Positions 10,449 to 59,389 of a stretch of DNA of 64,000 bases are shown one piece after another (position 1 is the stretch's first letter; each line of letters starts with the position of its first letter). The translations under genes were made by a program, and so were the position numbers. Location of the stretch: the IMG/VR virus record IMGVR_UViG_3300042516_005475, positions 62,001-126,000 of that record, one strand, 5' to 3'. The notes under the pieces are model-generated. The model was not told the origin of the DNA. It did not search any database and was given only the letters and a program-made list of their open reading frames with translations.

Positions 10449-10928
10449 ATGGCAACAGTAAACTTAAACAATCTCTTTAAGAAGCCAGTCAATCCTAATA
10501 GTGCTATAAAGTACATTTATCAGGACTTTAATGTCATGTCTATGGAAACACTTTATACCAATAACATTGCTGCTCGTAAAGTAAAGACTGACCTTAATGT
10601 TTCTTACGATGTCGCTGCTGTTAAAAACAGTATTTCTAATCTTTTAACAACAAAGAAGAGTGAAAAGATATTAAGCCCAGAATACGGTTTAAGAATAGAA
10701 GATTTTTTGTTTGAACCAGTTACAAGCACAACAGCTACTGCCATTGCCAACGAGATTGTCAATGCTTTAACAATATTTGAACCAAGAGTTCAAATAGTAG
10801 ATTTGCAAGTGATACCTTATCCAGATCAATACCTTTATGTAATTAATCTGGCATTGAGAATACCAACATTAAAACAATCTTTTTCCTTGCAAGGAACATT
10901 TCAAGGAGACGCAATAACAATTTTATAA
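10449..10928 (+). CDS. Baseplate wedge subunit, T4 gp25-like
   Basis: AVKNSISNLLTTKKSEKILSPEYG...FLFEP...FEPRV matches the gp25/GPW family signature. Confidence 0.9.
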   Translation: MATVNLNNLFKKPVNPNSAIKYIYQDFNVMSMETLYTNNIAARKVKTDLNVSYDVAAVKNSISNLLTTKKSEKILSPEYGLRIEDFLFEPVTSTTATAIANEIVNALTIFEPRVQIVDLQVIPYPDQYLYVINLALRIPTLKQSFSLQGTFQGDAITIL

Positions 10929-10929
10929 T

Positions 10930-17096: not shown

Positions 17097-19409
17097 ATGG
17101 TTTGCTCTGTACCTAACTTAACTGGATCTTTTGGAAGCTGCGCGCAAGACATTGTTGCAAGCGATTTTAACAAAGATTCTGTGTTTTGGTATATAGAAAA
17201 TGAAGATTCTGTATACAATTTTAAGCTAACTCTCTGCCCTTTCCTATCAGCTACACCATTAAAAATTGTTTATCCAGAAATTGAAATTTTTAATTTAAAG
17301 ACGTTTAATAAAACATACGCTTTCCCTTCATTTAACACAGTTGACGAGCAATCTTTTCCAAGTTTACTACCATTCTCTGTTAATAGCTTACCAAGCGGAG
17401 CAGAGTATAATATAAAAAGTATAGACCAACCAGTATTAAGTTACAACTCAATTAATAACATTTTTGATTTATCTTTTATTGGTAGATTTCCTGCTGGAGT
17501 AGAGGGTTTATCAATTTTTAATTACCGTTTCTTAAAGAATAATCAGACAGTTAATCCTTACGCAATAAACATTTATACTCCAAGTCAGTTTATTTTCTCT
17601 TCTAACTTTGCTGATGGTTATTTCTCTAAGTTCTTAGATTTACAAACATATCCTAAGAGTGTTGGTTTTTATGTGTTGCCCCTTTCAGTTAATACAATAG
17701 AATATCCTTGTAATTATGAACCCCCCTGCCAAAGTATTACAGCTGTTCACAATTTAGCTAATGACAGCTTAAAGTTTAACTCTGCTAGTGTTGATACTTT
17801 AAGCACATTTGGTAACAATGTTACTTTTTTAAACTATGTTTGCGGTTTTAACCCTGATAAAGACATACAGATAGTATTTGATGCTGCAGCTTATATTTTT
17901 AATAATGAGCAGGTTTTAGGTACAGTTAATAGTACAGAAATTTGTTCTGCTAGAACAGTTACTAATTTTACTAGAGGGGGAGCAGGAGAAGGTTTTTGTG
18001 TTTATTTTTACCAATTAACAAGCTTTGCTGATTTTATTGGTTCAGGACCAGCTTCTTGTTTTGGCTATGCTCCTGGCTCAGCTGTTGATGTAGACTACTT
18101 AAACGGAACACCTATGATGTTTCCGTTTGGTATGTATGGTGGTTATTTGGGGTTAGGTTTTGATATTGGTGGAGATTTCGGTACTCGTTTACATGGAAAA
18201 AGTGCTGTTGGGTCTGCTTCTCCTAATGCAAAACGTCCAAACACTATTACATTAAGAAGCAGTCAATTAGATAATTTTAATGTTTTAACAACAACAAATA
18301 ATTTAACAGCATACAATTTATATCTTGCACAACAAGTCACTTCTGTAGATGAAGTTAAGTTTAACACCTACAAAGTTGTATTAGATAATCACGGCAAAAG
18401 AATTAGAGCAAGTGTATTAGATTGTCTTTCAAACGAGTTTATAGATATTTTTTGCTATGAGGTTGACTTTGCAGATGGCTGTGATGCTTCTCCTTCAATT
18501 TTATTTCCTGGAATAAGCTTTTCTACAAGTGAATATACATGTAATTTTGAAATTAAAAATGTTTCATTTATAGGAGCCTTAGCTGACACTGAAGCAGATG
18601 CTTGTGGTAGAGTGCGTATACCAACACCAACTCCAACCTGCCCAATCTTCCTGCTATCTCCTACACCTACACCAACAAGTTCTGTTACACCAACACCAAC
18701 ACCTTCAATATCAGTATCTTCTACAGTTACACCAACTGTCACACCTACAAATACAGTAACCCCAACTTTAACACCTACAAAAACAGTTACACCTACAAAT
18801 ACTGTTACACCTACTCCTACTTTAACTCCTTTATACTCCCCAACCCCAACAAGTACTGCAACTCAAACAGTTACACCTACACCTACCATTACCCCAACTT
18901 TAACAGTTACACCTACAAAAACAGTTACACCTACACCTACCATTACCCCATCAGTAACAGTTACTCCAACACCATCCCCTGCTGCAACAAATGTGTATTG
19001 TTGGTTTACTCCTTCAATTTACATTTATCTTTCTAGCTTTGCCTCTTGTAGAGCTTATTTTACTGCTAATGGTATTTCTGAGCAATCAGGTGGAGTTATT
19101 ATTAGGAGTAATATTGCGGCGCTGGGTGGTATTGATTTAACCAAGATATTAAGATTTATTTTCAATAGACTGCCAACTGTTTCAAATATTTCTAGTACTA
19201 ATAATTGGGGTATATATGGATCAACTACACCAAACTATTATGTAAACTACACATACGATTCTGGTAATAATGATTATACTGTTGACATTTATAGAACAAG
19301 CGATAATGCTAATATTGCCAGTATTTCAAGCTTATCGTTCGTAAATAATGATGCAGCTCAGGAATCGTTTATAGCCTGCCAGTGTTTGTATGTAGCCTTA
19401 TACGTATAA
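17097..19409 (+). CDS. Putative virion adhesin: L-type lectin-like domain + Thr/Pro linker + Cys-containing C-terminal domain
   Basis: [11 protein letters not shown]...GPASCFGY...[14 protein letters not shown]...PNTITLR resembles bacterial L-type lectin domains. TPT repeats at about 18621-18980. C-terminal domain is shared with the 3533-aa protein. Confidence 0.65.
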
Positions 19410-19410
19410 T

Positions 19411-21150
19411 ATGAATAGAGTAAGCTCAAATTTTTATTTTGCCCCATCTTCAACCCAGACAAATTATCTTTCGTCTGGTAACCTAAGCGCTTTCTCTACT
19501 ACTAACTTTTCTCTTTCTACTGATGGTTTAACTAATCTTGTTTTAAGCTTATCAAATGTTCAAGAAAATTTTGACAGATATCAAAAGGTATTAGTTGATT
19601 GGGGTCAAGGCAAGGAGTATTATGAGGCTACAATTAACCCAATTTCTACTCAATCTATAAGTGATTTTATTTTTCAAAACTTTTTTACTACATCTTCTAC
19701 TAATGACCCGAACACCTTTAACGTTTCATTAAGTTTATTTAGATTGCCTTTTAATAATGTTTTTGATACAATTAATATTGATCTTAACATTTTTCAACCA
19801 AGCTTTACTGACGAGTATAATATAAAGTTATTAAAAAACTATAACTATTATGACCCAGATACTAAGATTAATAATTTAGTATTATTTATTGAGCAGCAAA
19901 ATAATAATGGTATTTCTGTTGTTTATAATGAGATAGGTAATAATTTAACTAATTTTGTTGATACAAGAATTAGTGCAGCTCTTGTAAATTTTGTACCAGA
20001 TGTTTCCGTAGAAGGCATCGCTGAGTATCATTTAAGTGCTTGTGATTGTAACGGATTACTAGCAGTAAATAGAGCCTCTGATGGTGTAGGACCAGCAATG
20101 GTAATTGTTACAGCCTTAACAGCAGACTTTTTATATACTTCTAGCACTAATACAGTTTATTATCCAGTAACAGGTTTTACATATTCAGCCTTGACTGAAA
20201 CAGCTAAAGTGATTAATTGGAGCTCTAATGAAACAGGTATAAAGTACTTCTCGGTACCGATTTATGTACCTGACTTATATGTAAATACACCTCAGTTCTT
20301 CTTAGTAACAATTGAAAATCTTTTTAACACTTTTGTTGACCCAACTTCAACACAGGCGTTTGTATTATTAGACCCATATTCTGATTGTATGTTAGATATG
20401 GAACCATGTGGAGTTGCTCCTATACCATCCCCAACAGTTACACCTACAATCACTCCTACAAATACAATCACTCCTACAATCACACCTACAATCACACCAA
20501 CGACTGGTTTATCTCCAACTGTTACCCCAACTGTAACCCCAACTAAAACTGTAACCCCAACTGTAACCCCAACTAAAACTGTAACCCCAACTTCTACCCC
20601 TACAGCTACCCCAACTGTAACCCCAACAAAGACATTAACACCTACTAACACAGTTACACCACCAGCTACAGTCACGCCAACAGTTACACCAACCACAACA
20701 CCACCAGCTACAGTTACACCAACAGTTACAGTCACCCCAACCGCAACACCACCAGCTACAGTTACACAAACAGTTACAGTTACTCCTTCACCAACACCTC
20801 AAGATCCAACATGCGCAGAGGCTTTGCAATTAGTCACCCTTACAGTTTATAACCCTTTCTCGGCAACTGTAACAGATTTAACTTGGTCAATTAATGACAC
20901 TGAAGAATCTCAGATGGCTATTTTTGCTACTCAACCGCTATCTGTTAGCCAATATGGAAACCCAACAATTGGAATAGTACGGTCTTGTTGTACTTTTGAT
21001 GATCCAACATGGAAAATAACATTCTACTGGACAAGCCCTGATGGGAAAGGACCCCAAAACTTTGTATTCCCTGATGATGTTTCTGATGGACCTTGGACAG
21101 TTTGTACATATGGAGCGCTATATAGTACATGGCAGGTCAATCTTAGCTAA
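19411..21150 (+). CDS. Putative virion protein: Calx-beta-like domain + Thr/Pro linker + Cys-rich C-terminal domain
   Basis: VINWSSNETGIKYFSVPIY...FLVTIEN resembles Calx-beta. TPT repeats at about 20420-20800. Confidence 0.55.
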   Translation: MNRVSSNFYFAPSSTQTNYLSSGNLSAFSTTNFSLSTDGLTNLVLSLSNVQENFDRYQKVLVDWGQGKEYYEATINPISTQSISDFIFQNFFTTSSTNDPNTFNVSLSLFRLPFNNVFDTINIDLNIFQPSFTDEYNIKLLKNYNYYDPDTKINNLVLFIEQQNNNGISVVYNEIGNNLTNFVDTRISAALVNFVPDVSVEGIAEYHLSACDCNGLLAVNRASDGVGPAMVIVTALTADFLYTSSTNTVYYPVTGFTYSALTETAKVINWSSNETGIKYFSVPIYVPDLYVNTPQFFLVTIENLFNTFVDPTSTQAFVLLDPYSDCMLDMEPCGVAPIPSPTVTPTITPTNTITPTITPTITPTTGLSPTVTPTVTPTKTVTPTVTPTKTVTPTSTPTATPTVTPTKTLTPTNTVTPPATVTPTVTPTTTPPATVTPTVTVTPTATPPATVTQTVTVTPSPTPQDPTCAEALQLVTLTVYNPFSATVTDLTWSINDTEESQMAIFATQPLSVSQYGNPTIGIVRSCCTFDDPTWKITFYWTSPDGKGPQNFVFPDDVSDGPWTVCTYGALYSTWQVNLS

Positions 21151-21183
21151 TTGAAAAATAATTAAGGTGGTATAAATCCTCGT

Positions 21184-22473
21184 ATGAGTTCCGCCTCTAA
21201 CGATAAGATTTTTTGCCAAATAGCTGCATATAGAGACCCCCAACTAATCCCAACGCTTAGAAGCATGATTGACAATGCTTCGAACCCAGACAACCTTGTA
21301 TTTTGTATTGCCTGGCAACGCGACAAGAGAGATGAGTTTGATAATCTAGAGATTTTTAGCCAGGATCCTAGATTTATTATTATTGAAATTCCTGCTATGG
21401 AGAGCAAAGGAGCCTGTTGGGCTCGTAACTTAATCCAGCAGCGCTATAATGGGGAAGGTTATACTCTTCAAATTGACAGCCACATGCGCTTTGTAAAAGA
21501 TTGGGACAGTAAATGCATCAGTATGATTAAGCAGCTACAAGAAACTGGCTATGAAAAGCCTTTGTTAACAAGCTATGTTAGCTCTTTTGACCCTGATGAT
21601 GATACTAAGTTTGTAAAAGAGCCATGGAAGATGAAGTTTGATCGCTTTATTCCAGAAGGAGCAATATTCTTCTTACCTGAAACAATTGATGAATGGCAGC
21701 ACTTAACAACACCTGTAAAGGCTAGATTCTATTCAGCTCACTTTTGCTTTACTTTGGGCACAATGTGTCAAGAGGTTCCACATGACCCAAATTATTATTT
21801 CCATGGTGAAGAAATTTCAATTGCTGTAAGAGCCTTTACTCACGGCTATGATTTATTCCACCCACATATGATTATTTGCTGGCATGAATATACTCGTAAG
21901 GGTAGAACCAAGCATTGGGATGACCACGTTGAGTCAAATAAAGAGGTGGTACCGTGGCATATTCGTAACAATGATTGCCACAAGCGTAATAGATGCTTGT
22001 TTAGCATGGATGGTGAGAAACATGAGTCTGTTGATTGGGGTATGTATGGTTTTGGTACTAAGCGTACTCTAAAAGATTATGAGGACTATGCTGGTATTAA
22101 TTTTAAGCTAAGACTTGCTCATAAGTTTACTACAGACAATGTTGATTATCCTCCTAATCCAATTGTTTATAAGAATGATGAAGAGTGGAAGTCTAAGTGC
22201 TTGAAGAATTACGACATACAGGTTCAGATAAAAGAAGAATATGAAAATAACCCAGACGTTCTATTTTGGTTCTTTGGAGTTCACAACGCCTCTGGAGATG
22301 AATTGTTCAGAAAAGACTTTACCTATGATATGTTAGAGAAGATTAGAAATGAGAACATTAAGTCTGAACTTGTAACAATTCGCACTAATGATAAGCCCGC
22401 TAAGTATATTATTTGGGTGCACAAGAAAGAAACCGGTTGGGGGCAAAGATTTGAAATACCAATTAACGTATGA
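21184..22473 (+). CDS. GT60-family (Pfam GlcNAc; Skp1-hydroxyproline / mucin-type alpha-GlcNAc transferase-like) glycosyltransferase
   Basis: IFCQIAAYRDPQL, SKGACWAR, YTLQIDSHMRF (DSH metal motif), VPHDP..YFHGEEI..AVRAFTHGYDLFHP...WHEY.R. Confidence 0.85.
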   Translation: MSSASNDKIFCQIAAYRDPQLIPTLRSMIDNASNPDNLVFCIAWQRDKRDEFDNLEIFSQDPRFIIIEIPAMESKGACWARNLIQQRYNGEGYTLQIDSHMRFVKDWDSKCISMIKQLQETGYEKPLLTSYVSSFDPDDDTKFVKEPWKMKFDRFIPEGAIFFLPETIDEWQHLTTPVKARFYSAHFCFTLGTMCQEVPHDPNYYFHGEEISIAVRAFTHGYDLFHPHMIICWHEYTRKGRTKHWDDHVESNKEVVPWHIRNNDCHKRNRCLFSMDGEKHESVDWGMYGFGTKRTLKDYEDYAGINFKLRLAHKFTTDNVDYPPNPIVYKNDEEWKSKCLKNYDIQVQIKEEYENNPDVLFWFFGVHNASGDELFRKDFTYDMLEKIRNENIKSELVTIRTNDKPAKYIIWVHKKETGWGQRFEIPINV

Positions 22474-24146
22474 ATAACGAAGTAACATTTGTAACAGGTC
22501 TTTGGGATTTAGGTAGAGATAAAATTGGAGGTGGTTTTAGGAGAGATTTTAACTCTCATTACCTGCCACAATTTCAAAACTTACTTGCTCAAAATATTAA
22601 TTTAATTATTTTTTGTGATAAAGATGTAGAAGAGTTTGTGTGGAGACATAGAGAACCTCGTAACACCCTTGTTATTAACAAACCTCTTGAATCCTTTAAA
22701 ACAAATTTTGATTTTTACAATCAAGTCCAGAATATTCGTAACAAACCTGAATGGAAAAATCAGGCTGGTTGGTTAGCTGACAGCCCGCAGAGCTCTCTTG
22801 AATATTATAACCCAGTTGTAATGAGTAAGTTCTTTATGTTGCATGATAGCTGCATAATGAACCCATTTAATACTGAGCATTTTTATTGGATTGATGCAGG
22901 TATTTCATCTACTGTTAACCTAAGTTATTTTTCAACATTTAATGTTCATAATAAACTTTCAAAATACATTTCCAGTTTATTGTTTGTTTGTTTCCCGTAT
23001 GATGGACAAGTAGAAATTCATGGGTTTACTAAGAGTAAATTTAATGAGTGCTGTAATGCTGACTCACAATATGTTGCAAGAGGTGGTTTTTTTGGTGGTA
23101 AGAGTGACTATATTAAGAAGTTTAACCCCAAATATTATGATACTCTTCGCTCTACTTTAAGTGAGGGTTATATGGGTACAGAGGAGAGTATTTTCACAAT
23201 TCTTTGCTATCTTTACCCAGAAGATATTTGCAGAGTAATGATTGAAGATAATGGTTTGCTTAATACTATATTTGAGGCTCTTAAAAACGACTCTATTGTA
23301 GTAGAAAGACCTATAAACTCTAAAAATTTTAAAATTCCAACATTAGAAGAGATTAAAATTTATGTATTAACATTCAATAGCTGCTCACAACTTGAATTGC
23401 TATTAAACAATTTTACTATTACGTATCCTGAATTGATATCAATTAAAGATAAAGTATTAATTAACAATAGTACAGAAAGAAGCTATGATGAGTGCTATAA
23501 AGAAATAGCTGATAAATATGGGTTCACTATTCAAAACTTCGACAACATTGGTATTTGTGGCGCGCGTCAATGGGTAGCTGAAGATTTTGAAAAATCTGAT
23601 AAGAGTTATTATATCTTCTTTGAAGATGATATGTTGTTTAATACTGATTTTACTTATTGTAAGAATGGTTTTAGCACCAAAGCTAATGATTTGTTTAACA
23701 AGAGCCTTAAAATTGTTGAAAAAGAAGCATTAGACTATCTTAAAATAAGCTTTTCAGAGTTTTTTGGTGGTAATAACCAACAGTGGGCTTATTGTAATGT
23801 GCCTCAGCAAGTAAGGCTAGATAATTTTGGTGATTTAAAGCTACAATTTCCAAGAGATTATGACAAGATTCCAGGGACTGTTACTTATTCTATAGGCTCT
23901 TTTGAAGGATTGCCATATGCTATTGGGGAGTTTTACTATTGTAACTGGCCATTACTGTTCACAAAACAAGGCAATCGCAAGGTTTTCCTTGATACTAAGT
24001 GGGGACACCCGTATGAACAAACATGGATGTCGTATGTATTTCAGGAGCAGCGTAAGAAAAACATAAAGGCTGGTTGTTTGTTACTCTCTCCAATAGCTCA
24101 TAACAGAGTTTATTTCTATAAAGCACAGGATAGAAGAGAGAGCTAA
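22470..24146 (+). CDS. Bifunctional glycosyltransferase: HtrL/YibB-like N-domain + GT-A (GT2-like) C-domain
   Basis: N-half TFVTGLWDLGR...YNPVVMSKF...NPFNTEHFYWIDAG...GGFFGG...GTEESIFT. C-half NIGICGARQW...YYIFFEDDM (DxD-like). Overlaps the GT60 stop (ATGA). Confidence 0.75.
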   Translation: MNNEVTFVTGLWDLGRDKIGGGFRRDFNSHYLPQFQNLLAQNINLIIFCDKDVEEFVWRHREPRNTLVINKPLESFKTNFDFYNQVQNIRNKPEWKNQAGWLADSPQSSLEYYNPVVMSKFFMLHDSCIMNPFNTEHFYWIDAGISSTVNLSYFSTFNVHNKLSKYISSLLFVCFPYDGQVEIHGFTKSKFNECCNADSQYVARGGFFGGKSDYIKKFNPKYYDTLRSTLSEGYMGTEESIFTILCYLYPEDICRVMIEDNGLLNTIFEALKNDSIVVERPINSKNFKIPTLEEIKIYVLTFNSCSQLELLLNNFTITYPELISIKDKVLINNSTERSYDECYKEIADKYGFTIQNFDNIGICGARQWVAEDFEKSDKSYYIFFEDDMLFNTDFTYCKNGFSTKANDLFNKSLKIVEKEALDYLKISFSEFFGGNNQQWAYCNVPQQVRLDNFGDLKLQFPRDYDKIPGTVTYSIGSFEGLPYAIGEFYYCNWPLLFTKQGNRKVFLDTKWGHPYEQTWMSYVFQEQRKKNIKAGCLLLSPIAHNRVYFYKAQDRRES

Positions 24147-24158
24147 ATAAATATTAAT

Positions 24159-31500: not shown

Positions 31501-32318
31501 CCAATACAGTTACACCAACCAATACAGTTACACCAACAAACACAGTAACCCCAACAGTAACACCACCAGTTACAGTAACACCAACTAACTCTGTAACCCC
31601 TACAGTAACACCAACCAATACAGTTACACCAACCAATACAGTTACACCAACAAACACAGTAACCCCAACAGTAACCCCAACAGTTACAGTAACACCAACT
31701 AACTCTGTTACTCCAACAGTTACAGTAACACCAACAGTAACACCACCAGTTACAGTAACACCAACTAACTCTGTTACTCCAACAGTTACAGTAACCCCAA
31801 CAGTAACACCACCAGTTACAGTAACACCTACAGTTACAGTAACACCACCAGCTACAGTAACACCTACAGTTACAGTAACCCCAGCAGCTACAGTTACTCC
31901 AACACCAACCCCCTCATCCCCACAATCTTGCCTTGAGCCCCTAACAACAGTTAGATGGGTATTGTGGAACCCTTACAATGATACAGACCCTTCGACTTTA
32001 GTTAATGCTGTAGTTAATTATACTCTCTCTAATAATTCAGGTAGCTCAACTTTCGGTTCCGGTACTCAATCCGTTCCAGTTGGAGCTTTTGGACAATCAC
32101 CAGCTGGTACATATTATACTTTAGGTACAACAAGTGATTGTTGTTCAGCGCCTTATACAGGTACTTTATTTTACACCTTATCTTGGGTAAATAGTTATGG
32201 GGTTTCTCGAGCAAATCGAGATATACCAGATTATTCAAACTCAGAAAACTACTGTAGTTGGGCAGCATCGTTACCTGTAGAGAGTGGTTTACCGACGTTT
32301 ACTTTAACTCTTAGTTAA
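28590..32318 (+). CDS. Large virion protein with propeller-like region, long Thr/Pro linker and Cys-containing C-terminal domain
   Basis: 1242 aa. NHL-like DIEFDPFGNLYLL and [15 protein letters not shown] repeats at about 31170-31920. Confidence 0.65.
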   Translation: MNNLYSVVSNSLGFNRAISIEPEKFPVLLEDILIKPNDFLTENNFNFSLSCLYQDFLSIVSDSYVYSPNFPVTNPFFDNINNIVGTLCGTLVPSNYSTEGTASIRYFVNGIPHSNAAFNIIYNTHDFVISGNYLTLAVGILSTTTLSPILSSNVYYPALGVYNYPLSAIFNNGEVTNSSEFPNQGFQESAVVPNFGVVTKFLNKNLNLKYNSISKLKIANERLYVLDNISNKFLIYDISDVIVNRTNKTTFEVPLETLGFATSSRTNIRKISSFCVNENYVVFFNYVNNALSIFSTNLNQLYDYSQDKVSVSGFRNTEVFADIEFDPFGNLYLLTQSGTVYVYTVSNTALTRVKTYNIQPQNTNVFSSLSAIQVTYQKEIFKKISFSKSDTNVFYVSTDTNIYKRFVDRNVNIGQFNNFVNNTTYYSTLSNIADPFNTLMGCCFAEYPAEKTSLDFLKYQINSTNSISYNGYEIFSVCFTDNCTYASQNAGPGFVLNVGSYGSIDFLTANLTYGLNPVSASGITFVVDRPNYINLNNDDLSAVLVYSFDDIKVKADEFITDFTINKSLRKLLYNIFNYQTYQAFKPVVDIDINNNAIYKKLDYIVSYNKNQNITNFDNFIGINEITSTVFLNRCFTKVYELLATMQANFNSRVINIYPRYADSVLLNQTTQKYASFYNDSETFITGEFDTEIEPLNPNLCVVENASTIVVSPTPSQTPLVSPIVFVTPTPTPAPSPTMPPTPTSSGYVLVNKSIQHVATVYLNNEYEIPVPIAPFPNYDIKPLSAIYDGTGIDTIVSEFSAYFDQGEFYIELAKVNGDYEKLVGKQFGDYILQSYTPSNNSEFILGARTCLQETHTIESLSPTPTPSITPTNTVTPTVTPTITPTSTVTPTVTPTITTTPANTVTPTNTVTPTVTPTNTVTPTNTVTPTVTPSVTPTTGLSPTPTQTITPTNTVTPTVTPTNSVTPTVTPTNTVTPTNTVTPTNTVTPTVTPPVTVTPTNSVTPTVTPTNTVTPTNTVTPTNTVTPTVTPTVTVTPTNSVTPTVTVTPTVTPPVTVTPTNSVTPTVTVTPTVTPPVTVTPTVTVTPPATVTPTVTVTPAATVTPTPTPSSPQSCLEPLTTVRWVLWNPYNDTDPSTLVNAVVNYTLSNNSGSSTFGSGTQSVPVGAFGQSPAGTYYTLGTTSDCCSAPYTGTLFYTLSWVNSYGVSRANRDIPDYSNSENYCSWAASLPVESGLPTFTLTLS

Positions 32319-32380
32319 TGAAAAAAATTGTTTGTAAATAGTTCAGCTATATTTTTAGCCCACTTTAATAAATAATAATA

Positions 32381-35300
32381 ATGGAATACGATAAGCCAGC
32401 AAAAATTGTATGGGTAGCTAAGCTATCAGCCACTGGGTTATATGATACTCCATTTTTAAAAATCGTTGACCCAACTACAGCACCTCAAAATATAGTCAAT
32501 GAATATACGGATTTAGGGTTAGAAAACTATACAATAAATAATTATTTTGTTAATACAAATTTACTTTTTAGTATAACAGATAATGAATTAAACACTAATA
32601 GAAAAACCTTTAACTGGACTTTTAGTGCCTATAAGGGACCATCTCAGGCTGCTTCTGCAATGATAGCGGTTAATTATTTTAACAATTATACTGCTAACGA
32701 TATGGGGTTGGTTATTAATTATAATAACCAGTATCTATCCCCACCATTTTATTTTGATCCTTATGAAACAAGCCCTAACCCTACCGCTTCTAAAACATTT
32801 ATAGTTCCTGCTGGTGCTCAAAATTTTCCTATACCGCTATGGGTGAGAGTAAATGATGGTTCTGCCATATCAACTTTTACATGTTTAGTTTGTACTAACC
32901 CTTCTATTATTTTAACTAATAATATTGCGAGATATTCCAATATATTTGTTACCCCATCACCAACACCAACAAATACAGTTACTCCAACTACTGGATTATC
33001 TCCAACTGCGACTCCTACTAATACACCTACCAACACCGTAACCCCTACAAATACCCCAACCAATACTGTTACTCCTACAAATACTCCAACCAATACTGTA
33101 ACACCAACAGTTACTCCAACTAATACTGTAACAGTAACACCCACTATCACCCCAACCAACACAGTTACTCCAACCAATACAGTAACACCAACCAATACTG
33201 TTACACCAACTAATACTGTTACACCAACAGTAACACCAACAAATACTGGTACTCCAAACAATACAGTTACACCAACAAATACAGTAACACCTACAGTTAC
33301 ACCAACCAACACAATCACCCCAACCAACACAGTAACACCAACCAATACAGTAACACCAACCAATACTGTTACACCAACTAATACAGTAACACCAACTAAT
33401 ACGGTTACCCCTACAAATACTGTTACTCCAACCATTACACCAACCAATACAGTAACACCAACTAATACAGTAACACCAACTAATACAGTAACACCAACAA
33501 TTACTCCTTCCAACACAGTAACACCAACCAACACAGTAACTCCAACAATTACACCAACAATTACCGTCACTCCTACAAACACAGTAACACCTACAATTAC
33601 TCCTTCCAACACAGTAACACCAACCAACACAGTAACACCAACAATTACACCAACCAATACTGTTACACCAACCAATACTGTCACACCTACCAATACAGTA
33701 ACACCAACAATTACTCCTTCCAACACAGTAACTCCAACAAATACGGTTACTCCAACTAATACAATTACACCTACAAATACGGTTACACCTACAAATACTG
33801 TTACACCAACAGTAACAGTAACACCAACCAATACAGTAACACCAACCAATACAGTAACACCAACAATTACTCCTACACCACCACAACCACCGAGCAAGAG
33901 AGCGATATTTGGTTTCGGTAGTACAACTTTTGGTGGTTTTGGGTCTCCTACTTCTCTTTCCAACATAGTATCAGATACTGGTGTATTGGCTTCAGATGTA
34001 ACTAATGTTGGTACGTCTGCTAGACTTTATCTAGCTGCTGCTAGTTTTGGTGATGGTTTAGCTATTTTTGGTTTCGGTTATAATAATGGTAATGCTGTTG
34101 GGGTGTATAACCCTGTAAATAATAGCGGAGAAATTGGAATTGATGATACCCGTGGTAGTTTTACTGCTAGATATCAGTTAGCGGCTGCAAGTTACGGTGG
34201 AGATAAAGCAATATTCGGGTTCGGTTCCACAACCTCAGGAGTAAGTTCTATTACAAATCTGGTAGATAATTTAGGTCAAATGGGTAATAATGTATCTACT
34301 GTTGGTACAGCTAGAAATAACCTCGCCGCTGCAGGTTATGGTACAGATAAAGCTATATTTGGTTTTGGTTTTTCAACAGCTATAACAAATATAACAAACC
34401 TTGTATCCAATACTGGTGTAATAGCTGCAGATGTAACAACCATTGGTACAGCAAGACAGATATTAGCTGCAGCTAGTTATGGTGGAGATAAAGCTATTTT
34501 TGGTTATGGTTATACTTCAAGCTTTGTTTCTTTAACAAATGTAGTAACTAACACAGGAGTAGTTGGAAGTGATGTAGGAGGGATTGGAACAGCTAGAGGC
34601 TATCTAGCAGCAGCAGGATACGGAACGGATAAAGCAATATTCGGGTTTGGTATAAACGGGTTTGGTGGTTCTACTTTGTCAATGACAAACCTAGTATCTA
34701 ACACAGGTGTTGTTGCTAATGATAATAGTACAGTTGGTACAGCTAGAATGGGTTTAGCAGCAGCAAGCTTCACTCAATATTTTGCACCTTCTCCAACACC
34801 TACTCCATCTATAACACCTTCTGAGACAGTTACACCAACAATTACTCCAACGGTTACACCTACAAATACGGTTACCTCAACCAATACAGTAACACCAACA
34901 ATTACCCCAACCAATACAGTTACACCAACAATTACCCCAACCAATACAGTTACACCAACCAATACAGTTACCCCAACAATTACACCAACCAATACAGTTA
35001 CACCAACCAATACAGTTACACCAACCAATACAGTTACACCAACAATTACCCCTACACCTGGAGCTACATCTACACCAACCAACACAGTAACACCAACAGT
35101 TACAGTTACACCAACCAATACAGTTACACCAACCAATACTGTTACACCAACCAATACTGTTACTCCAACAATAACCCCAACAAACTCATATACTGGTCCA
35201 GATAGAGCTATATTTGGTTTCGGACAATCATCTGGAAACACAGGTACAAATATAACTAATTTAGTTTCAGATACTGGCGTTGTAGCTTCTGATCTTTCTG

Positions 35301-38300
35301 GAGTAGGTACTGAAAGATCGCAACTTGCTGCTGCAAGCTATGGTTTTGATAAGGCTATTTTTGGTTATGGTGGTGGTCCATCCAACGCCTACAATAATGT
35401 TTCTACTTTAGTAAACAATTTAGGTGTAGTAGTTACTGATCAATTAGGTGTTGGTACTGGCAGAAAAGGTCTAGCAGCAGCTGGTTATGGTTACGATAAG
35501 GCGATTTTTGCTTTTGGGCGAACCTCTTCTGGAAATGTAAATATTTCAAATCTTGTGACTAATTTTGGTGTTATTGGCACAGATAATGCAAGTGTAGCCA
35601 CTTCTAAAGAAAACTTAGCAGCAGCTGTTTATGGTTACGATAAAGCAATTTTTGCATATGGTAGTAATTCAGGTGTTACAAATACAACCAACATTGTTTC
35701 AAATCTAGGAGTAATTTCTACAGATACAGCAGGAGTAGGAACAGCAAGATCAAGTCTCGCAGCAACAGGTTATGGCATGGATAAGGCAATATTTGGTTTT
35801 GGCTCTACAACTATTAATGTAAATATTACCTCGTTATTTTCAAATACAGGCTCTTATGTTAGTGAGAGTTCTGGTGTCGGTACTGCTAGAATTTATCTAG
35901 CAGCCACAGGTTACAATCAAGATAAAGCAATATTTGGTTTTGGTTTCGCTGGATTCTTTGCCTCCATGACAAATCTTGTTTCTAATATTGGCAATATTGC
36001 TGCTGATAATAGTACAGTAGGTACTGGAAGGTATGGGTTAGCTGCTGCAAGATTTGGTGGTATACTTCCAACTCCAACAGCTACTCCAACAGTTACTCCA
36101 ACAGTTACTCCAACTACCGGGCTATCTTCTACTCCAACTAATACAATTACACCAACTAATACAGTAACACCTACAATAACACCTACAATAACACCTACAG
36201 TAACACCTACCAATACAGTTACACCTACAATCACTCCAACGATTACTCCTACTCCAGCACCAATACAAAATTATAGTGGTATTTTTGGTTTCGGTACAAG
36301 TACTTCTGGAGGGAATACATCAATTACTAATTTATTAGTATCTAACATTGGTATTCTTGAAAATGATGTAACTACTGTTGCTACTGCCAGAAGTGAATTA
36401 GCAGCAGCAACTTACGGTACAGATAAAGCCATATTTGCTTTTGGGTATATTAACTCTGTCGGTGTTCAAAATATATCTAATTTAGTAACTAATGAGGGAG
36501 TTGTTGGAACCGATCAATCAACAGTAGGTACTTCTAGAAACCGTCTTGCAGCAGCTGGTTATGGTATAGATAAAGCTATTTTTGGTTACGGTTATAATGG
36601 AGGCTATTTGTCATTGACAAATATAGTTACTAATACCGGTGTTGTTGGTAGTGATCAAGGGGGGATTGGTACTGCTAGAGCTGATCTAGCAGCTGCTACT
36701 TTTGATAGAGATAGGGCAATTTTCGGTTTTGGAACTAATAACACTAATTTGTCAATGACAAATATAGTTACTAATACCGGTGTTGTTGGTAATGATGTAT
36801 CAAGTATTGGTACTGCTAGAAGAGGTCTAGCAGCTGCTACTTATGATGTAAATAAAGTTATATTTGGTTTCGGTAGTGTAGGAATTAGTGCTCCTGTATC
36901 AATAACCAATTTGGTTTCTAATACTGGTATTGTTGCTTCTGATACCTCTAATGTTCAAACAGCTAGAAGCGGTCTTGCTGCAGTAAGTATTGGTACTGAT
37001 AGAGCTATGTTTGGTTTTGGCTTTAGTAATACTGCTACAAATATTACAAATCTAATTAGTAATTTAGGAACAATTGTTACAGAAAATTTTGGTACTGGCA
37101 CTACAAGATACAGTCTAGCAGCTGCGAGCTTTGTTTATGTAGCCCCTACACCTTCCCCAACAATTACTCCAACAATTACTCCAACAATTACTCCAACAAA
37201 TACAGTAACACCAACTAATACACCTACCAATACAGTAACACCTACAGTTACACCTACCAATACAGTTACACCAACGAATACACCACCAAATACACCACCA
37301 CCTCAATCAGATAAGAGCGCAATATTTGGATATGGTACCAATGGTAGTTTTGGAAATAACTTATCAATGACCAATTTAGTATCTAACGCTGGTGTTGTTA
37401 CTATAGATCAAACCGGGGTTGGAACTGCAAGATATGGTTTAGCTGCTGCAAGCTATGGTGGAGACAAGGCAATATTTGGATATGGTTATGTTTCAGCTGG
37501 GTCTGGAGTACAGAATATAACCAACAAAGTTTCAAATCTTGGTATAGTTGCTAATGATGATGCTGGTGTCGGTACTCAAAGATTCTATTTAGCTGCAGCT
37601 ACCTATGGTACTGATAAAGCAATATTTGGATATGGTCAAAATAGTTCATTTGTTGGAGTTACAATAACCAATTTAGTGAATAACATTGGTAATGTTGCTT
37701 CAGACGTAACTAGTGCTGGTACTGCAAGAAGCGCATTAACATCTGCTAGCTACGGTTACGATAAGGCAATATTTGCTTTAGGTAACGGAAGTGTAATTAA
37801 TAAGATTTCAAACACTGGTATTGTTGCTTCAGATTCAAGTGGTACACCTCCAACAGCTCGAAATGGTGCTTTCGGTGCTGGGTATGGTTATGATACAGCT
37901 ATACTTGGTTTTGGTTATGATGGAACACATTTAAATACTATAACACTAATTAACAACCAAGGAGACGTTGTCACTAATACTACTGGAGGTGGTTCTTCTA
38001 GAGCTTTTGGTGCTTCAGCAAGCTATAGTACTGATAAGGCAATATTTGGTTATGGTAGTACTACTAGTTCTGCTTCGTCTGTAATAACTCTTATTTCAAA
38101 CACAGGTACAGTCGCATCAGAATCATCCGGAGTTGGTACAGCAAGAAGCAGTCTAGCTGGAGCAAGCTATGTTTCTGGTATTGCTCCGTCACCTACAGCT
38201 ACAACAACAATTACACCAACAGTAACACCTACCAATACAGTTACACCAACCAACACAGTAACACCAACTAACACACCAACTAACACAGTTACTCCAACAG

Positions 38301-41300
38301 TTACAGTTACACCAACCAATACAGTTACACCAACAAACACAGTTACACCAACTAACACAGTTACACCAACAATTACCCCAACTAATACAGTTACAGTTAC
38401 ACCTACTAACACAGTAACACCTACTAACACAGTAACACCAACACCTACGAGTACACCAGGTGCTTCTGTAACACCAACAGCTACTCCATTTGCTTTAACA
38501 AATAAAAATGCAATATTTGGTTTTGGACAAAATAATAGTGGCTCTCCCGTTTCTATGACTAACATAGTAGCTACTAATGGTAATGTGGCTTCAGATGTAA
38601 CTAGTGTTAATACAGCAAGAAGTGGTTTGGCTGCAGCTAGCTATGGTGGAGATAAGGCAATATTCGGATATGGTTATTCTAATACATTTGTTTCTATTAC
38701 TAACTTAGTTTCCGGTGCTGGTGTTGTTGCTTCAGATGTATCTAGTGCTGGTACTGCTAGATGGGCCTTAGCTGCAGCAAGTTTTGGTACTGATCAAGCG
38801 ATATTTGGTTACGGTTATAATGGTGCAGGTATTTCTATAACTAATAAAGTTTCTAACACTGGTATTGTTTCTTCTAATAATAGTACAGTTGGCTCAGCAA
38901 GAGGTAGATTAGCGGCAGCAGGTTATGGTTATGATAAAGCAATATTCGGTTATGGTTATATTTTTGAAAGCTTTGCATATGTTTCTATCTCTAATTTAGT
39001 ATCTAATACAGGTAATGTTGCTGCAGATGTTACAAATGCCGGTTCAAGACAATACCTAGCTGCGGCTGGATATGGTGGAGATAAAGCTATTTTTGGTTTT
39101 GGTGACTTTGGTAGTTATACAAATATTACAAACAAGGTTTCAAACACCGGTATTGTTGCAGCTAATACAAATGTTACTGGTACAGCTAGAAATGGTCTAG
39201 CAGCTGCTAGCTATAGTACAAATTTAGCAATATTTGGTTATGGTTATACCGGTTCAGCGTTATCAATGACCAATAAAATAAATTCAGATGGGGATGTAGC
39301 TTCTGATATAACTGGGGTTGGTACAGCTAGATATTATTTAGCTGCAGCAAGTTTTGGTCCTGAAATAATACCAACCCCAACAACTACTGCTTCAAACACA
39401 CCGACTAATACAGTGACCCCTACAGTTACACCAACTAACACAGTAACTCCAACTAACACAGTAACTCCAACCAATACTGTTACCCCTACAAATACAGTTA
39501 CACCAACTAACACTGTAACTCCAACTAACACTGTTACTCCTACAAATACAGTTACTCCAACAATTACACCAACTAATACAGTTACACCAACTAATACAGT
39601 TACTCCAACCATTACAGTTACACCAACAAACACACCAACTAACTCTGTTACACCAACAGTTACAGTTACTCCAACAATTACACCAACAATTACACCTACA
39701 CAAGATAATACATATTGCTTCCAAACTCCAGTACAAACTGTATATTTAAATAACTTTGATATTTGTCAAAATTATATAAAAGACCAACTTTTTGCCTCAA
39801 ATCTTCAATCAAGAGGGGCTTCTGATCTTCGAAAAATTCTCCTTTATATTACTCAAGTACTACCAACTACAAGCAACATATTAAATAATTCTAACTGGGG
39901 AGACTTTGGTACTACTAACGCTGCTTATAGTGTAATTTACACTTTTAATGGAATAGTTGGCGGTAAAAATCAATATTATGTATCAATAGAATGGTCATAT
40001 TCTGGTAATGTTGAACCCTATCAAATAGCTTATATTAGCTATCTATCATATAATAATAATACTGGTCAATGCGCGATTGATATGTGCTTGTTGAATGTTA
40101 TTCAATATTTTAATGTAACACCAACCCCAACAGTTACACCAACAGTTACAGTAACTCCAACCAATACAGTAACACCAACAAATACAGTTACACCAACAGT
40201 TACACCAACCACTACAGTAACCCCAACAAATACTGTTACCCCTACTGTTACCCCTACTGTTACAACGACAACTGGTTTATCTCCTACAATTACCCCTACA
40301 ATTACTCCAACAAACACTGTAACTCCAACAATTACACCAACCAATACAGTAACACCAACAATCACACCAACCAGCACAGTTACTCCTACAAATACTGTTA
40401 CTCCTACAAATACTGTTACACCTACAAATACTGTAACTCCAACCAATACAGTAACACCAACAGCTACTGTAACTCCAACTATCACTGTTACACCAACTAA
40501 TACAGTAACTCCACCCAATACTGTTACTCCAACCATTACAGTTACACCAACAATCACACCAACTAACTCTGTTACACCAACAATCACACCAACCAATACA
40601 ATCACACCAACAATTACACCCACACAAGATAACACATATTGTTTTCAGACTCTTAGAGTCCCAGTATATTTAAACAGCTTTGCAAGTTGTCAGGGTTATA
40701 TTTCTGGCTTAATTAGTTCTTCTAACATTGGTTCAAGAGGAGCAACAGATATTGTTAAGATTCTACGATACATTGTTAATAACTATAACCCTAGTGTTAA
40801 TATTTTAAATAATACAGACTGGGGAATTTATGGAACAACTGGTGGTGCTTATAGTGTACTTTATACTTATAATGGAATAGTATCTGGTAACAATGAATAT
40901 TATGTTTCTATTGAGTACACAACAGGGACACAGCAAATTCAAGTTGCTTATATCAGCTGGATGACTACAAATCTATCCCCTGGTTCTTGTATATTTGACA
41001 TGTGTTTAATTAATATTCTAACTTTTACTAATATTGATCCAACACCTACCCCAACTCCATCAGTAACTCCAACCAATACAGTAACTCCAACAAATACAGT
41101 TACACCAACCAACACAGTAACTCCAACTAATACAGTTACACCAACCAACACAGTAACACCAACAATTACACCAACTAATACAGTTACACCAACAGTTACA
41201 CCAACTAATACAGTTACACCAACCAACACAGTAACGCCAACAATTACACCAACTAATACAGTTACACCAACTAATACAGTTACACCAACAGTTACACCAA

Positions 41301-42982
41301 CTAATACAGTTACACCAACCAACACAGTAACGCCAACAATTACACCAACCACCACAGTAACGCCAACAATTACACCAACTAATACAGTTACACCAACAAT
41401 CACTCCCACAATTACACCTACACAAAAGAATACATATTGCTTCCAGTCTCCGGATACTGAACCATACATTAATAATTTTGCCGATAGTAAGAATTATATA
41501 ATTAATGCTATTGATTCTTCTAATATTGCTTCAAGAGGCGCAACTGATATAGCTAAGATTCTTAAGTTTGTTGTAAGCAGACTATATTTAGTTGGAAATA
41601 TATTTAATAATTATAGTTGGGGAGCATATGGTACAACTTCAGCAGCCTATAACGTAGTTTTCACTAATTTCGGTCCAGAGGGTAGCAATCAGAAATATTA
41701 CTTTGAAATTCAGCCAAGTTATGTAACACCAACTCAATATATTGCATATTGTTCATATTTGTTCTTCAATATGAATACTGGTACAATGTTAGTTGATATG
41801 TGTTTACTTAATATTTTTGATTATAGTAACTTCCCAGCAACACCAACACCTACAATTACTGTTACTCCAACTCAATCGTTAACACCAACTAATACAGTTA
41901 CACCAACTAATACAGTTACACCAACTATAACTCCAACCAAAACAGTTACCCCTACACCAAATAGTACCTTAACTACTCCAACTACCCCAACTTTAACTCC
42001 AACCAAGACAGTTACACCAACAGTTACAGTAACACCAACAGTAACTGTAACACCAACAGTAACTGTAACACCAACAGTAACCCCAACAGCCTCTCCTGTT
42101 TTAACAAATAAACAAGCTATTTTTGGTTATGGTCAAGGGGATAGCGGTATACTTTCAAAATCTAACACAGTTACAAATCTTGGTGTAGTTAATATAGATC
42201 AAACCGGGGTTGGAACTGCAAGATATGGTTTAGCTGCTGCAAGTTACGGTGGAGATAAGGCAATATTTGGATATGGCGCAAGTGATATTAAGCTTTCTAT
42301 AACCAATACTGTTACAAATCTTGGTATAGTTAATGCTGATCAAGCAGGAGTTGGTACAGCAAGACTTTATTTAGCTGCTGCAAGTTATGGTGGAGATAAG
42401 GCAATATTTGGCTTTGGCTTCGATGGAGGTTATACAAGTACAACCAACACTGTTACAAATCTTGGTATTGTTAATTCAGATACAAGTAGCGTAGCCACAT
42501 CAAGAGCTAATTTAGCTGCTGCAAGTTATGGTGGAGATAAAGTAATATTTGGTTTTGGAGCAACATACTCAGCGGGTAATGTTTTCTATAATAAAACCTC
42601 ACTATTTTCTAATACAGGTGTGTATGTTAGTGAAACTGACAATATTGTAACTGAAAGAGGTTTCCTCGCTGCAGCTGGTTACGGAACAGATAAAGCAATA
42701 TTTGCTTATGGTTTTAATAATAGCGGGTTCCTTTTATTAACTAATAAAGTTACAAATACAGGCACTCTTGGTTCAGATACTACTGTTGCCGGTACTGCTA
42801 GATACGCTTTAGCAGCAGCTGGTTATGGTGGAGATAAGGCGATATTTGGGTTTGGTTTCTCAAGCGACTATAGTGTTGTTAATACTACTACCTTATTTGA
42901 CAATCAAGGTAATTTTGTTAGTGAAAATTCTGGGGTTGGTACTGCAAGATACGATCTTGCAGCAGCAAGCTTTGGTAGCTAA
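32381..42982 (+). CDS. Giant (3533 aa) mucin-like multidomain protein: six Kelch-like 6-bladed propellers, three YCFQ domains, nine Thr/Pro linkers
   Basis: Continuous ORF. 36 copies of a ~47-aa unit AIFG(F/Y)G...TN.VSNTG.V..D...VGTAR..LAAA.YG.DK, in groups of six separated by TPTNTV arrays. Confidence 0.8.
32951..33890 (+). repeat. Degenerate coding tandem repeat (18-nt TPTNTV and 12-nt TPTI/TPTV units), longest of the Thr/Pro arrays
   Basis: Recurring ACACCAACYAAYACAGTW units. Similar arrays at about 18621-18980, 20420-20800, 31170-31920, 34787-35182, 36068-36260, 37144-37300, 38185-38487, 39371-39700, 40118-40625, 41039-41422 and 41840-42095. Confidence 0.95.
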
Positions 42983-46664: not shown

Positions 46665-46739
46665 GGGAGGTTAGCTCAGCGGCAGAGCAGATCCTTTACA
46701 CGGATAAGGCCAGAGGTTCAAATCCTCTACTTCCCACCA
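46665..46739 (+). tRNA. tRNA-Val(TAC)
   Basis: Acceptor GGGAGGT/ACTTCCC, anticodon loop TT-TAC-AC, T-arm AGAGG-TTCAAAT-CCTCT, encoded CCA. Confidence 0.93.
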
Positions 46740-46744
46740 TTTAT

Positions 46745-54425: not shown

Positions 54426-54442
54426 TAAATATTTTCACTAAT

Positions 54443-58564: not shown

Positions 58565-58569
58565 TTTTT

Positions 58570-59385: not shown

Positions 59386-59389
59386 AATT

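What the first reader, a model, noticed from the sequence alone, without database searches (positions are those of the whole stretch)
18989..41830. Unrecognised ~130-aa YC(F/W) domain present four times in two different proteins
Seen: three copies in the giant protein (about 39707-40110, 40631-41030, 41429-41830) and one at the C-terminus of 17097-19409 (about 18989-19406). Shared pattern: N.YC(F/W)...Y(L/I)..F....Y......SN(I/L)...G..D..KIL......(N/S)I.....WG.(Y/F)G.T...Y.V.(Y/F)T.......Y...I.......(I/V)A.(I/C)S..........CL. Every copy follows a Thr/Pro tether. I do not recognise the family. The N- and C-terminal Cys could close the domain with a disulfide.
Basis: seen in the sequence. Interest (0 to 1): 0.62.

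Follow-up and report, generated by a model that had tools for sequence, protein, structure and literature searches.

The report
Unnamed phage fibre-tip domain, tethered
A real, previously unnamed 130-residue protein domain of lake-water T4-like phages hangs on flexible Thr/Pro tethers four times in this phage, and as a free-standing protein in related phages it is predicted to cap a tail-fibre tip, so it is most likely a new host-attachment module.

Summary
Four in-frame copies of a ~130-135 aa YC(F/W) domain exist: three in the 3,533-aa protein (32381-42982) and one at the C-terminus of the 770-aa protein (17097-19409). BLASTP between the two proteins gives E 7e-21 to 3e-13. Each copy follows a Thr/Pro tether.

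No described family matches. Pfam, PHROGs, PDB sequence profiles, Foldseek and VIA on PDB, BFVD and the ESM Atlas all gave nothing convincing (best Z 4.6, TM 0.51). The AF2 model (pLDDT 77) is a two-helix, six-strand alpha+beta fold.

The window is part of a 230-kb T4-like phage found in many lake-water metagenomes. A profile search of 1.84 billion proteins found only this family.
- **Tethered copies:** these occur in relatives of this phage.
- **Free-standing proteins:** 126-164 aa proteins occur in a second T4-like lineage, always directly after a tail-fibre-like gene.

A complex prediction places one free-standing protein on the trimeric fibre tip (score 0.74, best control 0.00). It docks through an N-terminal segment that the tethered copies lack.

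Best reading: a distal, non-enzymatic host-binding module delivered in two ways, functionally like gp38 adhesins but unrelated to them. Binding to the host is inferred, not shown.

The parts
17097..19409 (+). P0002, a 770-aa protein in the baseplate gene cluster: N-terminal body (aa 1-506), Thr/Pro tether, C-terminal YCW domain
   Evidence: ORF and translation. It lies three genes after gp25 and gp6. Eight orthologues of 758-770 aa share this architecture.
18615..18992 (+). Thr/Pro tether of P0002 (aa 507-632)
   Evidence: Composition scan; sequence.
18987..19406 (+). YC(W) domain copy at the C-terminus of P0002 (aa 631-770)
   Evidence: HMM i-Evalue 1.9e-54.
32381..42982 (+). Giant 3,533-aa beads-on-a-string protein: N-terminal domain, six six-blade propeller-like modules and three YCF domains, all separated by Thr/Pro tethers
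39359..39712 (+). Thr/Pro tether before copy 1 (aa 2327-2444)
39704..40120 (+). YCF domain copy 1 (aa 2442-2580); this copy was modelled
40103..40636 (+). Thr/Pro tether before copy 2 (aa 2575-2752)
40628..41038 (+). YCF domain copy 2 (aa 2750-2886)
41015..41434 (+). Thr/Pro tether before copy 3 (aa 2879-3018)
41426..41836 (+). YCF domain copy 3 (aa 3016-3152); lacks the middle Cys21
   Evidence: Fragment P0011 from a relative is its orthologue.
33905..39358 (+). Five propeller-like modules of six ~48-aa DKAIFGFG repeats each (aa 509-800, 942-1224, 1299-1584, 1646-1931, 2039-2326), with tethers between them
   Evidence: Repeat count and spacing. Weak similarity to Photorhabdus PHL/PLL propeller lectins.
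42110..42979 (+). Sixth propeller-like module, at the C-terminus of the giant (aa 3244-3533)
10449..12738 (+). gp25-like and gp6-like baseplate wedge genes, which mark the cluster as the baseplate/tail module
   Evidence: PF04965 E 7.9e-15. phrog_219 E 6.7e-35. 28% identity to cyanomyovirus gp6.
21184..24146 (+). Two glycosyltransferase genes (PF11397 GlcNAc; HtrL_YibB) set among the genes for tethered proteins

Best explanation
The YC(F/W) unit is an autonomous, non-enzymatic alpha+beta domain specific to aquatic T4-like phages. It most likely acts as a distal host-surface-binding (adhesin) module of the tail apparatus. The family is delivered in two ways. In one phage lineage it is a free-standing 126-164 aa protein encoded directly after a tail-fibre gene. 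In the window's lineage that segment is missing. The domain is instead joined covalently through a 120-180 residue Thr/Pro tether and has gained a Cys pair in its first and last strands, probably a disulfide staple. It hangs once from a baseplate-cluster protein and three times from a 3,533-aa protein that also carries six lectin-like propellers, which gives a multivalent set of binding heads on flexible strings.

Shown: the domain is real and recurrent; it is restricted to phages; no known family or fold matches; its gene contexts; the module swap in a relative. Predicted by modelling: the fold and the fibre-tip docking. Inferred: host binding, the disulfide and any glycosylation of the tethers.
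For: 1. Recurrence and significance of the four copies.
2. The window's genome is a 230-kb T4-like phage, and the genes lie in the baseplate and tail-fibre cluster.
3. A profile search of 1.84e9 representative proteins gave 9 hits, 8 of them phage family members. A word search found 42 clusters of free-standing members.
4. In every free-standing locus read, the order is PhoH | 424-500 aa fibre-like gene | domain gene | fibre paralogue(s) | HSP20 ... gp25, gp6. The upstream gene has GNVTGNLTG repeats and matches the 'putative tail fiber' of Roseobacter CRP phages at E 2e-7.
5. Complex prediction of three fibre C-termini plus one free-standing protein: ipSAE 0.74, best of 3 controls 0.00. That mark was reached by 58 of 80 solved complexes and 2 of 110 mismatched pairs; these counts hold only roughly here because my own alignments were used. 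The runs share at least 85% of contacts and partner pLDDT is at least 87. The partner touches all three fibre copies through residues 1-28. That segment includes an 11-residue insertion absent from the tethered copies.
6. Only F18, G69, T71 and Y75 are invariant across the family, with no catalytic-type residues.
7. Among P0002 orthologues the domain is less conserved than the N-terminal body (73.7% against 83.4% mean identity, lower in 27 of 28 pairs), as is usual for receptor-binding tips.
8. Tethered C-terminal modules are interchangeable. In a relative with 79% DNA identity, the orthologue of the gene after P0002 carries a propeller in place of its Cys-rich domain.
9. The co-tethered propellers weakly resemble Photorhabdus PHL/PLL lectins.
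Against: There is no direct evidence of binding to any host structure, and the host is unknown. The fold has no informative structural neighbour, so the fold says nothing about function. The complex prediction concerns the free-standing relatives, not the window's own copies, and it fits a tip-bound chaperone as well as an adhesin. Some residues of the shared core also contact the fibre in that model (36, 40, 44, 103, 105, 125-138), so the core might be a docking surface rather than a receptor surface. That P0002 and the giant are virion proteins is inferred from gene position only. The P0002 body could not be modelled (pLDDT 31).
Confidence: 0.55

Rival explanations
1. The domain is a tail-fibre assembly chaperone or tip-protecting cap, like T4 gp38, Tfa or Pam3 gp25. 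It would bind the fibre's C-terminal tip to help trimer folding, not to recognise the host.
For: The free-standing genes sit directly after a fibre gene, which is the classic chaperone position. The predicted complex puts the protein on the fibre's C-terminal tip. Phage fibre chaperones that stay bound to the distal fibre are known (PMC9608196).
Against: Three conserved internal tandem copies in a protein built of propellers, and one copy held 126 residues from a non-fibrous body, are hard to explain as chaperones. The tethered copies lack the segment that makes the fibre contacts. The predicted stoichiometry is one cap per trimer, not the 3:3 seen for Pam3 gp25. There is no match to chaperone families in Pfam or PHROGs.
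Confidence: 0.2
2. The domain is an inert structural or decorative bead: a spacer, a stabiliser, or a docking piece that binds another virion protein. It would have no role in host recognition.
For: No ligand site can be named. Part of the shared core contacts the fibre in the model. The most conserved motif (WG.YGTT..Y) may simply be core structure.
Against: It sits at free C-terminal ends of long flexible tethers, alongside lectin-like propellers and swappable modules. It evolves faster than the protein body it hangs from. Each of the three giant copies has been kept as a distinct orthologue (P0011 matches copy 3).
Confidence: 0.15
3. The domain is an enzyme, such as a depolymerase, esterase or lyase acting on the host envelope.
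For: Phage fibres often carry enzymatic heads (general knowledge).
Against: Only Phe, Gly, Thr and Tyr are invariant across the 18 aligned members, with no conserved Asp/Glu/His/Ser/Lys/Cys set. There is no match to any enzyme family or fold.
Confidence: 0.04
4. The domain is a diverged von Willebrand A (vWA) domain, as suggested by hit P0017 in the profile search.
For: P0017, a 958-aa protein with four vWA-like repeats, scored E 2.1e-7 over four stretches on profile positions 37-92.
Against: Profile-profile comparison with one repeat gives probability 5.6% over 53 columns. The summed score comes from a four-fold repeated helix-strand coincidence. The AF2 topology (strand, two helices, then five antiparallel strands) is not a Rossmann-like vWA fold. 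No vWA chain appears in any fold search.
Confidence: 0.01

Closest known systems
Gp38 adhesins of T2/S16-type Straboviridae (monomeric tip adhesin on the trimeric gp37 long tail fibre)
   Same: For the free-standing relatives: a small protein encoded directly after the fibre gene, predicted as one monomer docked on the trimeric fibre tip through its N-terminal part. Gp38 is described as monomeric with an N-terminal attachment domain joining it to gp37 (PMC12032242).
   Different: There is no sequence or fold relation, and no glycine-rich motifs, beta-helix or polyglycine sandwich. This is a 130-aa alpha+beta domain. In the window the module is not docked but covalently tethered by Thr/Pro linkers, and it is repeated three times inside one protein.
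Tail-fibre assembly chaperones (T4 gp38/gp57A, Tfa of Mu and lambda, Pam3 gp25)
   Same: Gene position after the fibre gene, and binding to the distal fibre.
   Different: No family match. Predicted 1:3 stoichiometry rather than 3:3. The tethered, tandem and internal copies have no counterpart among chaperones.
Carbohydrate-binding modules on Thr/Pro-rich linkers in bacterial glycoside hydrolases and cellulosomal proteins
   Same: Architecture only: small autonomous globular modules, singly or in tandem, joined by long Thr/Pro linkers and mixed with other binding modules. The comparison rests on general knowledge; the architecture here comes.
   Different: No CBM family in Pfam matches. Sugar binding is untested. 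The carrier is a phage tail-cluster protein, not an enzyme.
SRPBCC/START-like helix-grip and Cyt1A-type alpha+beta folds
   Same: An antiparallel sheet packed against helices; these are the top structural rows (Z 4.3-4.6, 90-103 residues, rmsd 4.2-5.0).
   Different: The scores are at background level for this search, where the typical best Z for unmatched models is 7-8. The model has no long C-terminal helix over the sheet. There is no sequence signal.

Membership tests
Any Pfam-A or PHROGs family | Significant profile-HMM match | tested here: not met
   Pfam: no significant hit for the four copies (best DUF6275, E 0.11, below cutoff) or for five family proteins, four of them free-standing. 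PHROGs: best E 0.029-0.043.
Any solved or predicted fold (PDB, BFVD, ESM Atlas) | Structural match clearly above background | tested here: not met
   Model pLDDT 77, pTM 0.78. Foldseek on PDB: best E 0.044. VIA wide: best Z 4.3. VIA on the Foldseek list: best Z 4.6. BFVD: best E 0.016 with TM 0.30. Atlas: TM <= 0.51. The model has moderate confidence, so a known fold is not excluded.
Gp38-type tip adhesin | Gene directly downstream of the distal fibre gene | tested here: met
   Met for the free-standing relatives in all loci read. Not applicable to the window's tethered copies.
Gp38-type tip adhesin | One monomer attached to the trimeric fibre tip by an N-terminal attachment part | tested here: inconclusive
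   Predicted only: ipSAE 0.74 against best control 0.00. The mark was reached by 58 of 80 solved complexes and 2 of 110 mismatched pairs. Contacts run through residues 1-28 to all three fibre copies. No experiment.
Gp38-type tip adhesin | Glycine-rich motifs and hypervariable segments forming a polyglycine sandwich; sequence homology to gp38 | tested here: not met
   No such motifs in the alignments. The model is alpha+beta. No family hit.
Tail-fibre assembly chaperone (Tfa/Caudo_TAP-like) | Sequence match to chaperone families; needed for fibre folding | tested here: not met
   No Pfam or PHROGs hit. The folding requirement cannot be tested with these tools.
vWA domain | Profile-level homology and an alternating beta-alpha Rossmann-like fold | tested here: not met
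   hhalign probability 5.6%. The model's topology differs.
   Co-occurrence is perfect: both Cys are present in 13 of 13 tethered copies and absent from all free-standing members. They lie in the first and last strands of the model. No coordinates were available, so the distance was not measured.
PLL/PHL-type beta-propeller lectins (for the neighbouring DKAIFGFG modules, not the YC domain) | Repeat-register sequence match to the lectin propeller | tested here: inconclusive
   phmmer E 8.3e-4 to 5mxe_A; a profile of the six modules gives E 0.021, with blades aligned in register. These modules have six blades and the lectin has seven (the lectin's count is general knowledge). Pfam gave no hit.

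The most novel reading that the evidence does not exclude
The YC(F/W) family is a new class of monomeric phage tip adhesin, convergent with gp38. Evolution has used it both as a detachable cap on a trimeric fibre and as a disulfide-stapled head on long mucin-like tethers, possibly glycosylated by the two glycosyltransferases in the same cluster. On this reading the 3,533-aa protein is a multivalent adhesin rope: six lectin-like propellers plus three YC heads that catch host surface glycans at a distance before the baseplate engages.
Probability: 0.35. Interest if true: 0.65.

Novelty: new variant of a known kind. Interest (0 to 1): 0.5.

Why it matters
Host-recognition proteins of uncultured freshwater phages are almost entirely unannotated. 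This work defines a new domain family with clear boundaries, about fifty sequence clusters and two architectures. It also gives a testable model: a monomeric cap on a trimeric fibre, or a head on a tether.

If the model is right, the domain marks receptor-binding genes in a widespread group of lake phages. The recombinant domain could serve as a probe to pull the unknown hosts out of lake water. The family would also show that a module can switch between non-covalent docking and covalent tethering. The Thr/Pro-tethered, swappable modules and the adjacent glycosyltransferases further suggest a mucin-like, possibly glycosylated, fibre system in a phage, which would be unusual.

Tried and rejected
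- **GenBank phages (INPHARED):** megablast of the baseplate region found nothing. tblastn with the P0002 domain, the P0002 body and a free-standing member also found nothing.
- **Full-length relatives of the giant:** the word search found none. The only trace is a 176-aa fragment on a 1.9-kb contig, probably because the repeated linkers break assemblies.
- **AF2 of the P0002 body (aa 1-506, 8 close orthologues):** this failed (pLDDT 31.5) and was not used. My impression that aa 290-360 look ConA-lectin-like therefore stays untested; Pfam gave nothing.
- **vWA lead (P0017):** rejected.
- **PDB sequence profile of the family:** best hit was flagellar hook FlgE at E 0.0088 over 54 columns. I treat it as chance.
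- **ESM Atlas by features:** no usable hit. A second call failed because the protein exceeds the size limit.
- **The genome search by the handle of L007:** the record is not held, so the giant's orthologue in the 79%-identical relative could not be read.
- **IMG/VR pattern scan with the four copies:** this returned only contigs of the same phage.
- **Frameshift fusion idea:** I considered that the fibre gene and the free-standing domain gene might be fused by a programmed frameshift, since the domain lies in the +1 frame. I saw no canonical slippery site and did not pursue it.
- **Scope notes:** Read laying was not used.
Full report
**1. What the window is**

The window is bases 62001-126000 of a 230,047-bp IMG/VR virus record rated complete, with 36% G+C. 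It encodes:
- gp25-like and gp6-like baseplate wedge proteins at 10449-12738. The gp25-like gene matches PF04965 at E 7.9e-15. The gp6-like gene matches phrog_219 at E 6.7e-35 and is about 28% identical to cyanomyovirus gp6;
- a ribonucleotide reductase, a Lon-like protease and a collagen-like tail fibre;
- three tRNAs.

It is therefore a large T4-like myovirus, far from any GenBank phage (no megablast hit). The P0002 gene occurs nearly intact in at least 20 lake-water metagenome runs filed under as many study codes. The host is unknown.

**2. The observation**

The 3,533-aa ORF (32381-42982, P0001) and the 770-aa ORF (17097-19409, P0002) carry the motif YC[FW] at aa 2445, 2753 and 3019, and at aa 634.
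- The four 135-140 aa segments align with 28 invariant columns.
- BLASTP of the P0002 segment against the giant's last third gives E 7e-21, 2e-17 and 3e-13.
- Each copy begins right after a Thr/Pro tract of 118-178 residues.
- A family HMM finds exactly four copies in the whole genome.
- Contigs from two other IMG/VR records are 100% and 99.99% identical across these genes. Other assemblies thus reproduce the architecture; whether those samples are independent of the window's source is not known.

**3. Is it a known family?**

No.
- Pfam and PHROGs give nothing significant for the copies or their relatives.
- A profile against all PDB sequences gives only chance-level rows.
- An AF2 model of giant copy 1, built from an 11-sequence alignment, has pLDDT 77 and pTM 0.78. 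Its topology is strand 4-7, helices 18-31 and 40-51, then strands 59-64, 70-85, 88-99, 102-113 and 125-132.
- Fold searches all stay at background. Foldseek on PDB: best E 0.044. VIA against 48,161 representatives: best Z 4.3. VIA on Foldseek's top 1000: best Z 4.6, to Cyt1A and START-like chains. BFVD: best E 0.016 at TM 0.30. ESM Atlas: TM <= 0.51.

The model's confidence is moderate, so I do not claim a new fold. I claim only that no known fold or family is recognisable.

**4. Where else the domain occurs**

A profile search of 1.84 billion representative proteins returned nine hits.
- One is a P0002 orthologue.
- One is a 176-aa fragment orthologous to giant copy 3.
- Six are small proteins of 126-160 aa.
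- One is a 958-aa protein with four vWA-like repeats. Its score comes from a 53-column coincidence repeated four times (hhalign probability 5.6%), so I reject it.

P0014, one of the six small proteins, is not free-standing. Its frame is open upstream into a TPTVTPTV linker, and the next gene is a homologue of the gene after P0002. It is therefore a distant tethered orthologue.

Word searches added eight full-length P0002 orthologues with the same architecture and 42 clusters of free-standing members.

**5. Context of the free-standing members**

Every free-standing locus read shows the same order: PhoH, a 424-500 aa gene, the domain gene, one or two paralogous genes, HSP20, and further on gp25 and gp6. 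This is a second T4-like lineage.

The upstream gene looks like a tail fibre.
- It has a conserved N-terminal part, a variable number of GNVTGNLTG repeats and a conserved C-terminal region of about 250 aa.
- It matches the 'putative tail fiber' of Roseobacter CRP phages at E 2e-7.
- The downstream genes share an N-terminal region of roughly 125-150 aa with each other, as fibre paralogues do.

**6. Predicted docking**

I modelled three copies of the fibre's last 249 residues with one free-standing protein, using my own alignments.
- The score was ipSAE 0.74 (three runs: 0.77, 0.74, 0.74) against 0.00 for the best of three controls.
- In the tool's calibration this mark was reached by 58 of 80 solved complexes and 2 of 110 mismatched pairs. 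These counts hold only roughly here because my own alignments were used.
- The runs agree in at least 85% of contacts, and partner pLDDT is at least 87.
- The partner touches all three fibre chains at the same residues (about 139-247 of the piece, including the terminal AIQNF). It uses its own residues 1-28, plus 36, 40, 44, 103, 105 and 125-138.

One monomer therefore sits on the three-fold axis of the fibre tip. Residues 11-22 of the free-standing proteins are an insertion that the tethered copies lack. The docking element is thus specific to the non-tethered form. This is a model's confidence, not a measurement, and it concerns relatives of the window's domain.

**7. What differs in the tethered form**

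All 13 tethered copies have Cys at model positions 5 and 128, in the first and last strands. P0014's second Cys is offset by one column. The free-standing members have Phe at the first position and Phe, Val or Leu (Arg in one) at the second. I could not measure the distance.

**8. The carriers and their other modules**

- **The giant protein.** It has a 188-aa N-terminal domain, then five modules of six ~48-aa DKAIFGFG repeats, then the three YCF domains, then a sixth such module. All are separated by Thr/Pro tethers.
- **The propeller-like modules.** They also end two proteins outside the window. They weakly resemble the Photorhabdus propeller lectins PHL and PLL, with blades aligned in register (E 8.3e-4 for one module, 0.021 for a profile).
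- **A third tethered module.** A Cys-rich domain of about 110-130 aa ends the 579-aa and 1,242-aa proteins of the cluster.
- **Module swapping.** In a relative with 79% DNA identity and the same gene order, the orthologue of the 579-aa protein keeps its body and tether but ends in a propeller. Tethered heads are therefore exchanged between close relatives, as receptor-binding tips are.
- **Evolutionary rate.** Among P0002 orthologues the YCW domain is less conserved than the body: 73.7% against 83.4% mean identity, lower in 27 of 28 pairs.
- **Invariant residues.** Only Phe18, Gly69, Thr71 and Tyr75 are invariant across the family. That argues against an enzyme.

**9. Interpretation**

The best-supported reading is a distal, non-catalytic binding head of the phage tail apparatus. 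It works like a gp38-type tip adhesin (monomeric, with N-terminal attachment to the trimeric fibre; PMC12032242), but it is unrelated to gp38 in sequence and predicted fold. In this phage it is delivered on covalent tethers rather than docked.

The main rival is a tip-bound assembly chaperone (compare Pam3 gp25, which binds 3:3; PMC9608196). That rival fits the free-standing gene position and the predicted complex. It does not fit the three internal tandem copies, the long tethers, or the loss of the docking segment.

Host binding itself, the disulfide, and presence in the virion are inferences.

**10. Limits**

- The body of P0002 could not be modelled.
- No intact giant orthologue from another species could be read.
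- No expression or proteomic data exist.

Noticed in passing
L011:1700-1770, L016:7690-7760, L018:6220-6300, L019:4170-4240, L014:9985-10060, L009:870-940: At the junction of the fibre gene and the free-standing domain gene, the fibre ends ...AIQNFS, followed by stop and TGATATG, and the small protein starts MIQNFSFWQQ. The pentapeptide IQNFS therefore occurs twice, 2-3 codons apart, encoded by different codons. Diverged loci keep weaker versions (VINNFQ* / MNFPFANW; AIQNFS* / MRNFAFW). The small gene is in the +1 frame. This could reflect strand mimicry at the docking site, a relic of a split fusion, or recoding.
   Followed up: partly
window 33905-39358 and 42110-42979; also G000:C1:216520-220257 (minus strand, outside the window): Eight modules of six ~48-aa DKAIFGFG...[11 protein letters not shown]...VGTAR..LAAA.YG repeats: six in the giant and one each at the C-termini of a 462-aa and a 773-aa protein. 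They have no Pfam or PHROGs family. They show weak, register-true similarity to the Photorhabdus propeller lectins PHL and PLL (E 8.3e-4 and 0.021).
   Followed up: partly
window 21184-24146: Two glycosyltransferase genes (PF11397 GlcNAc-type, E 8e-73; HtrL_YibB, E 8e-16) lie between genes whose products carry long Thr/Pro tethers. The relative L007 has the same arrangement. The tethers may be O-glycosylated like mucins. Virion glycosylation by phage enzymes is known for mycobacteriophages (Freeman et al. 2023, cited in PMC12619734).
   Followed up: no
window 20812-21147 and 31923-32315: A third kind of tethered C-terminal module, Cys-rich and about 110-130 aa, ends the 579-aa and 1,242-aa proteins. 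Both proteins hit phrog_15511 weakly, and the two modules align at E 0.003. It has no named family.
   Followed up: partly
L007:12291-14627 compared with window 19411-21150: Module swap between close relatives (79% DNA identity). The orthologue of the 579-aa protein keeps its N-terminal body and Thr/Pro tether but ends in a six-blade propeller instead of the Cys-rich domain.
   Followed up: yes
window 46665-46818 and 49252-49327; giant gene 32381-42982: The phage encodes tRNA-Val(UAC), tRNA-Pro(UGG) and tRNA-Gly(GCC) just downstream of the giant gene. The giant uses CCA for 71% of its 275 Pro codons, against 43% in eight other genes of the window. Val and Gly codon use does not differ. Threonine makes up 23% of the giant (797 of 3,533 residues).
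   Followed up: partly
window 52001-60000: G+C rises to 42-45% here, against 32-38% elsewhere. The region spans the ribonucleotide reductase and a 1,373-aa collagen-like tail-fibre gene (54443-58564). This may reflect the Gly-X-Y codon bias or a foreign origin.
   Followed up: no
G000:C1:6118-7494 (minus strand, outside the window): Another Thr/Pro-tethered protein (458 aa), with four N-terminal repeats of about 30 aa (LTETIYITS.YVSGG.TY.LP) and a different C-terminal head. Tethered modular proteins are a genome-wide theme in this phage.
   Followed up: no
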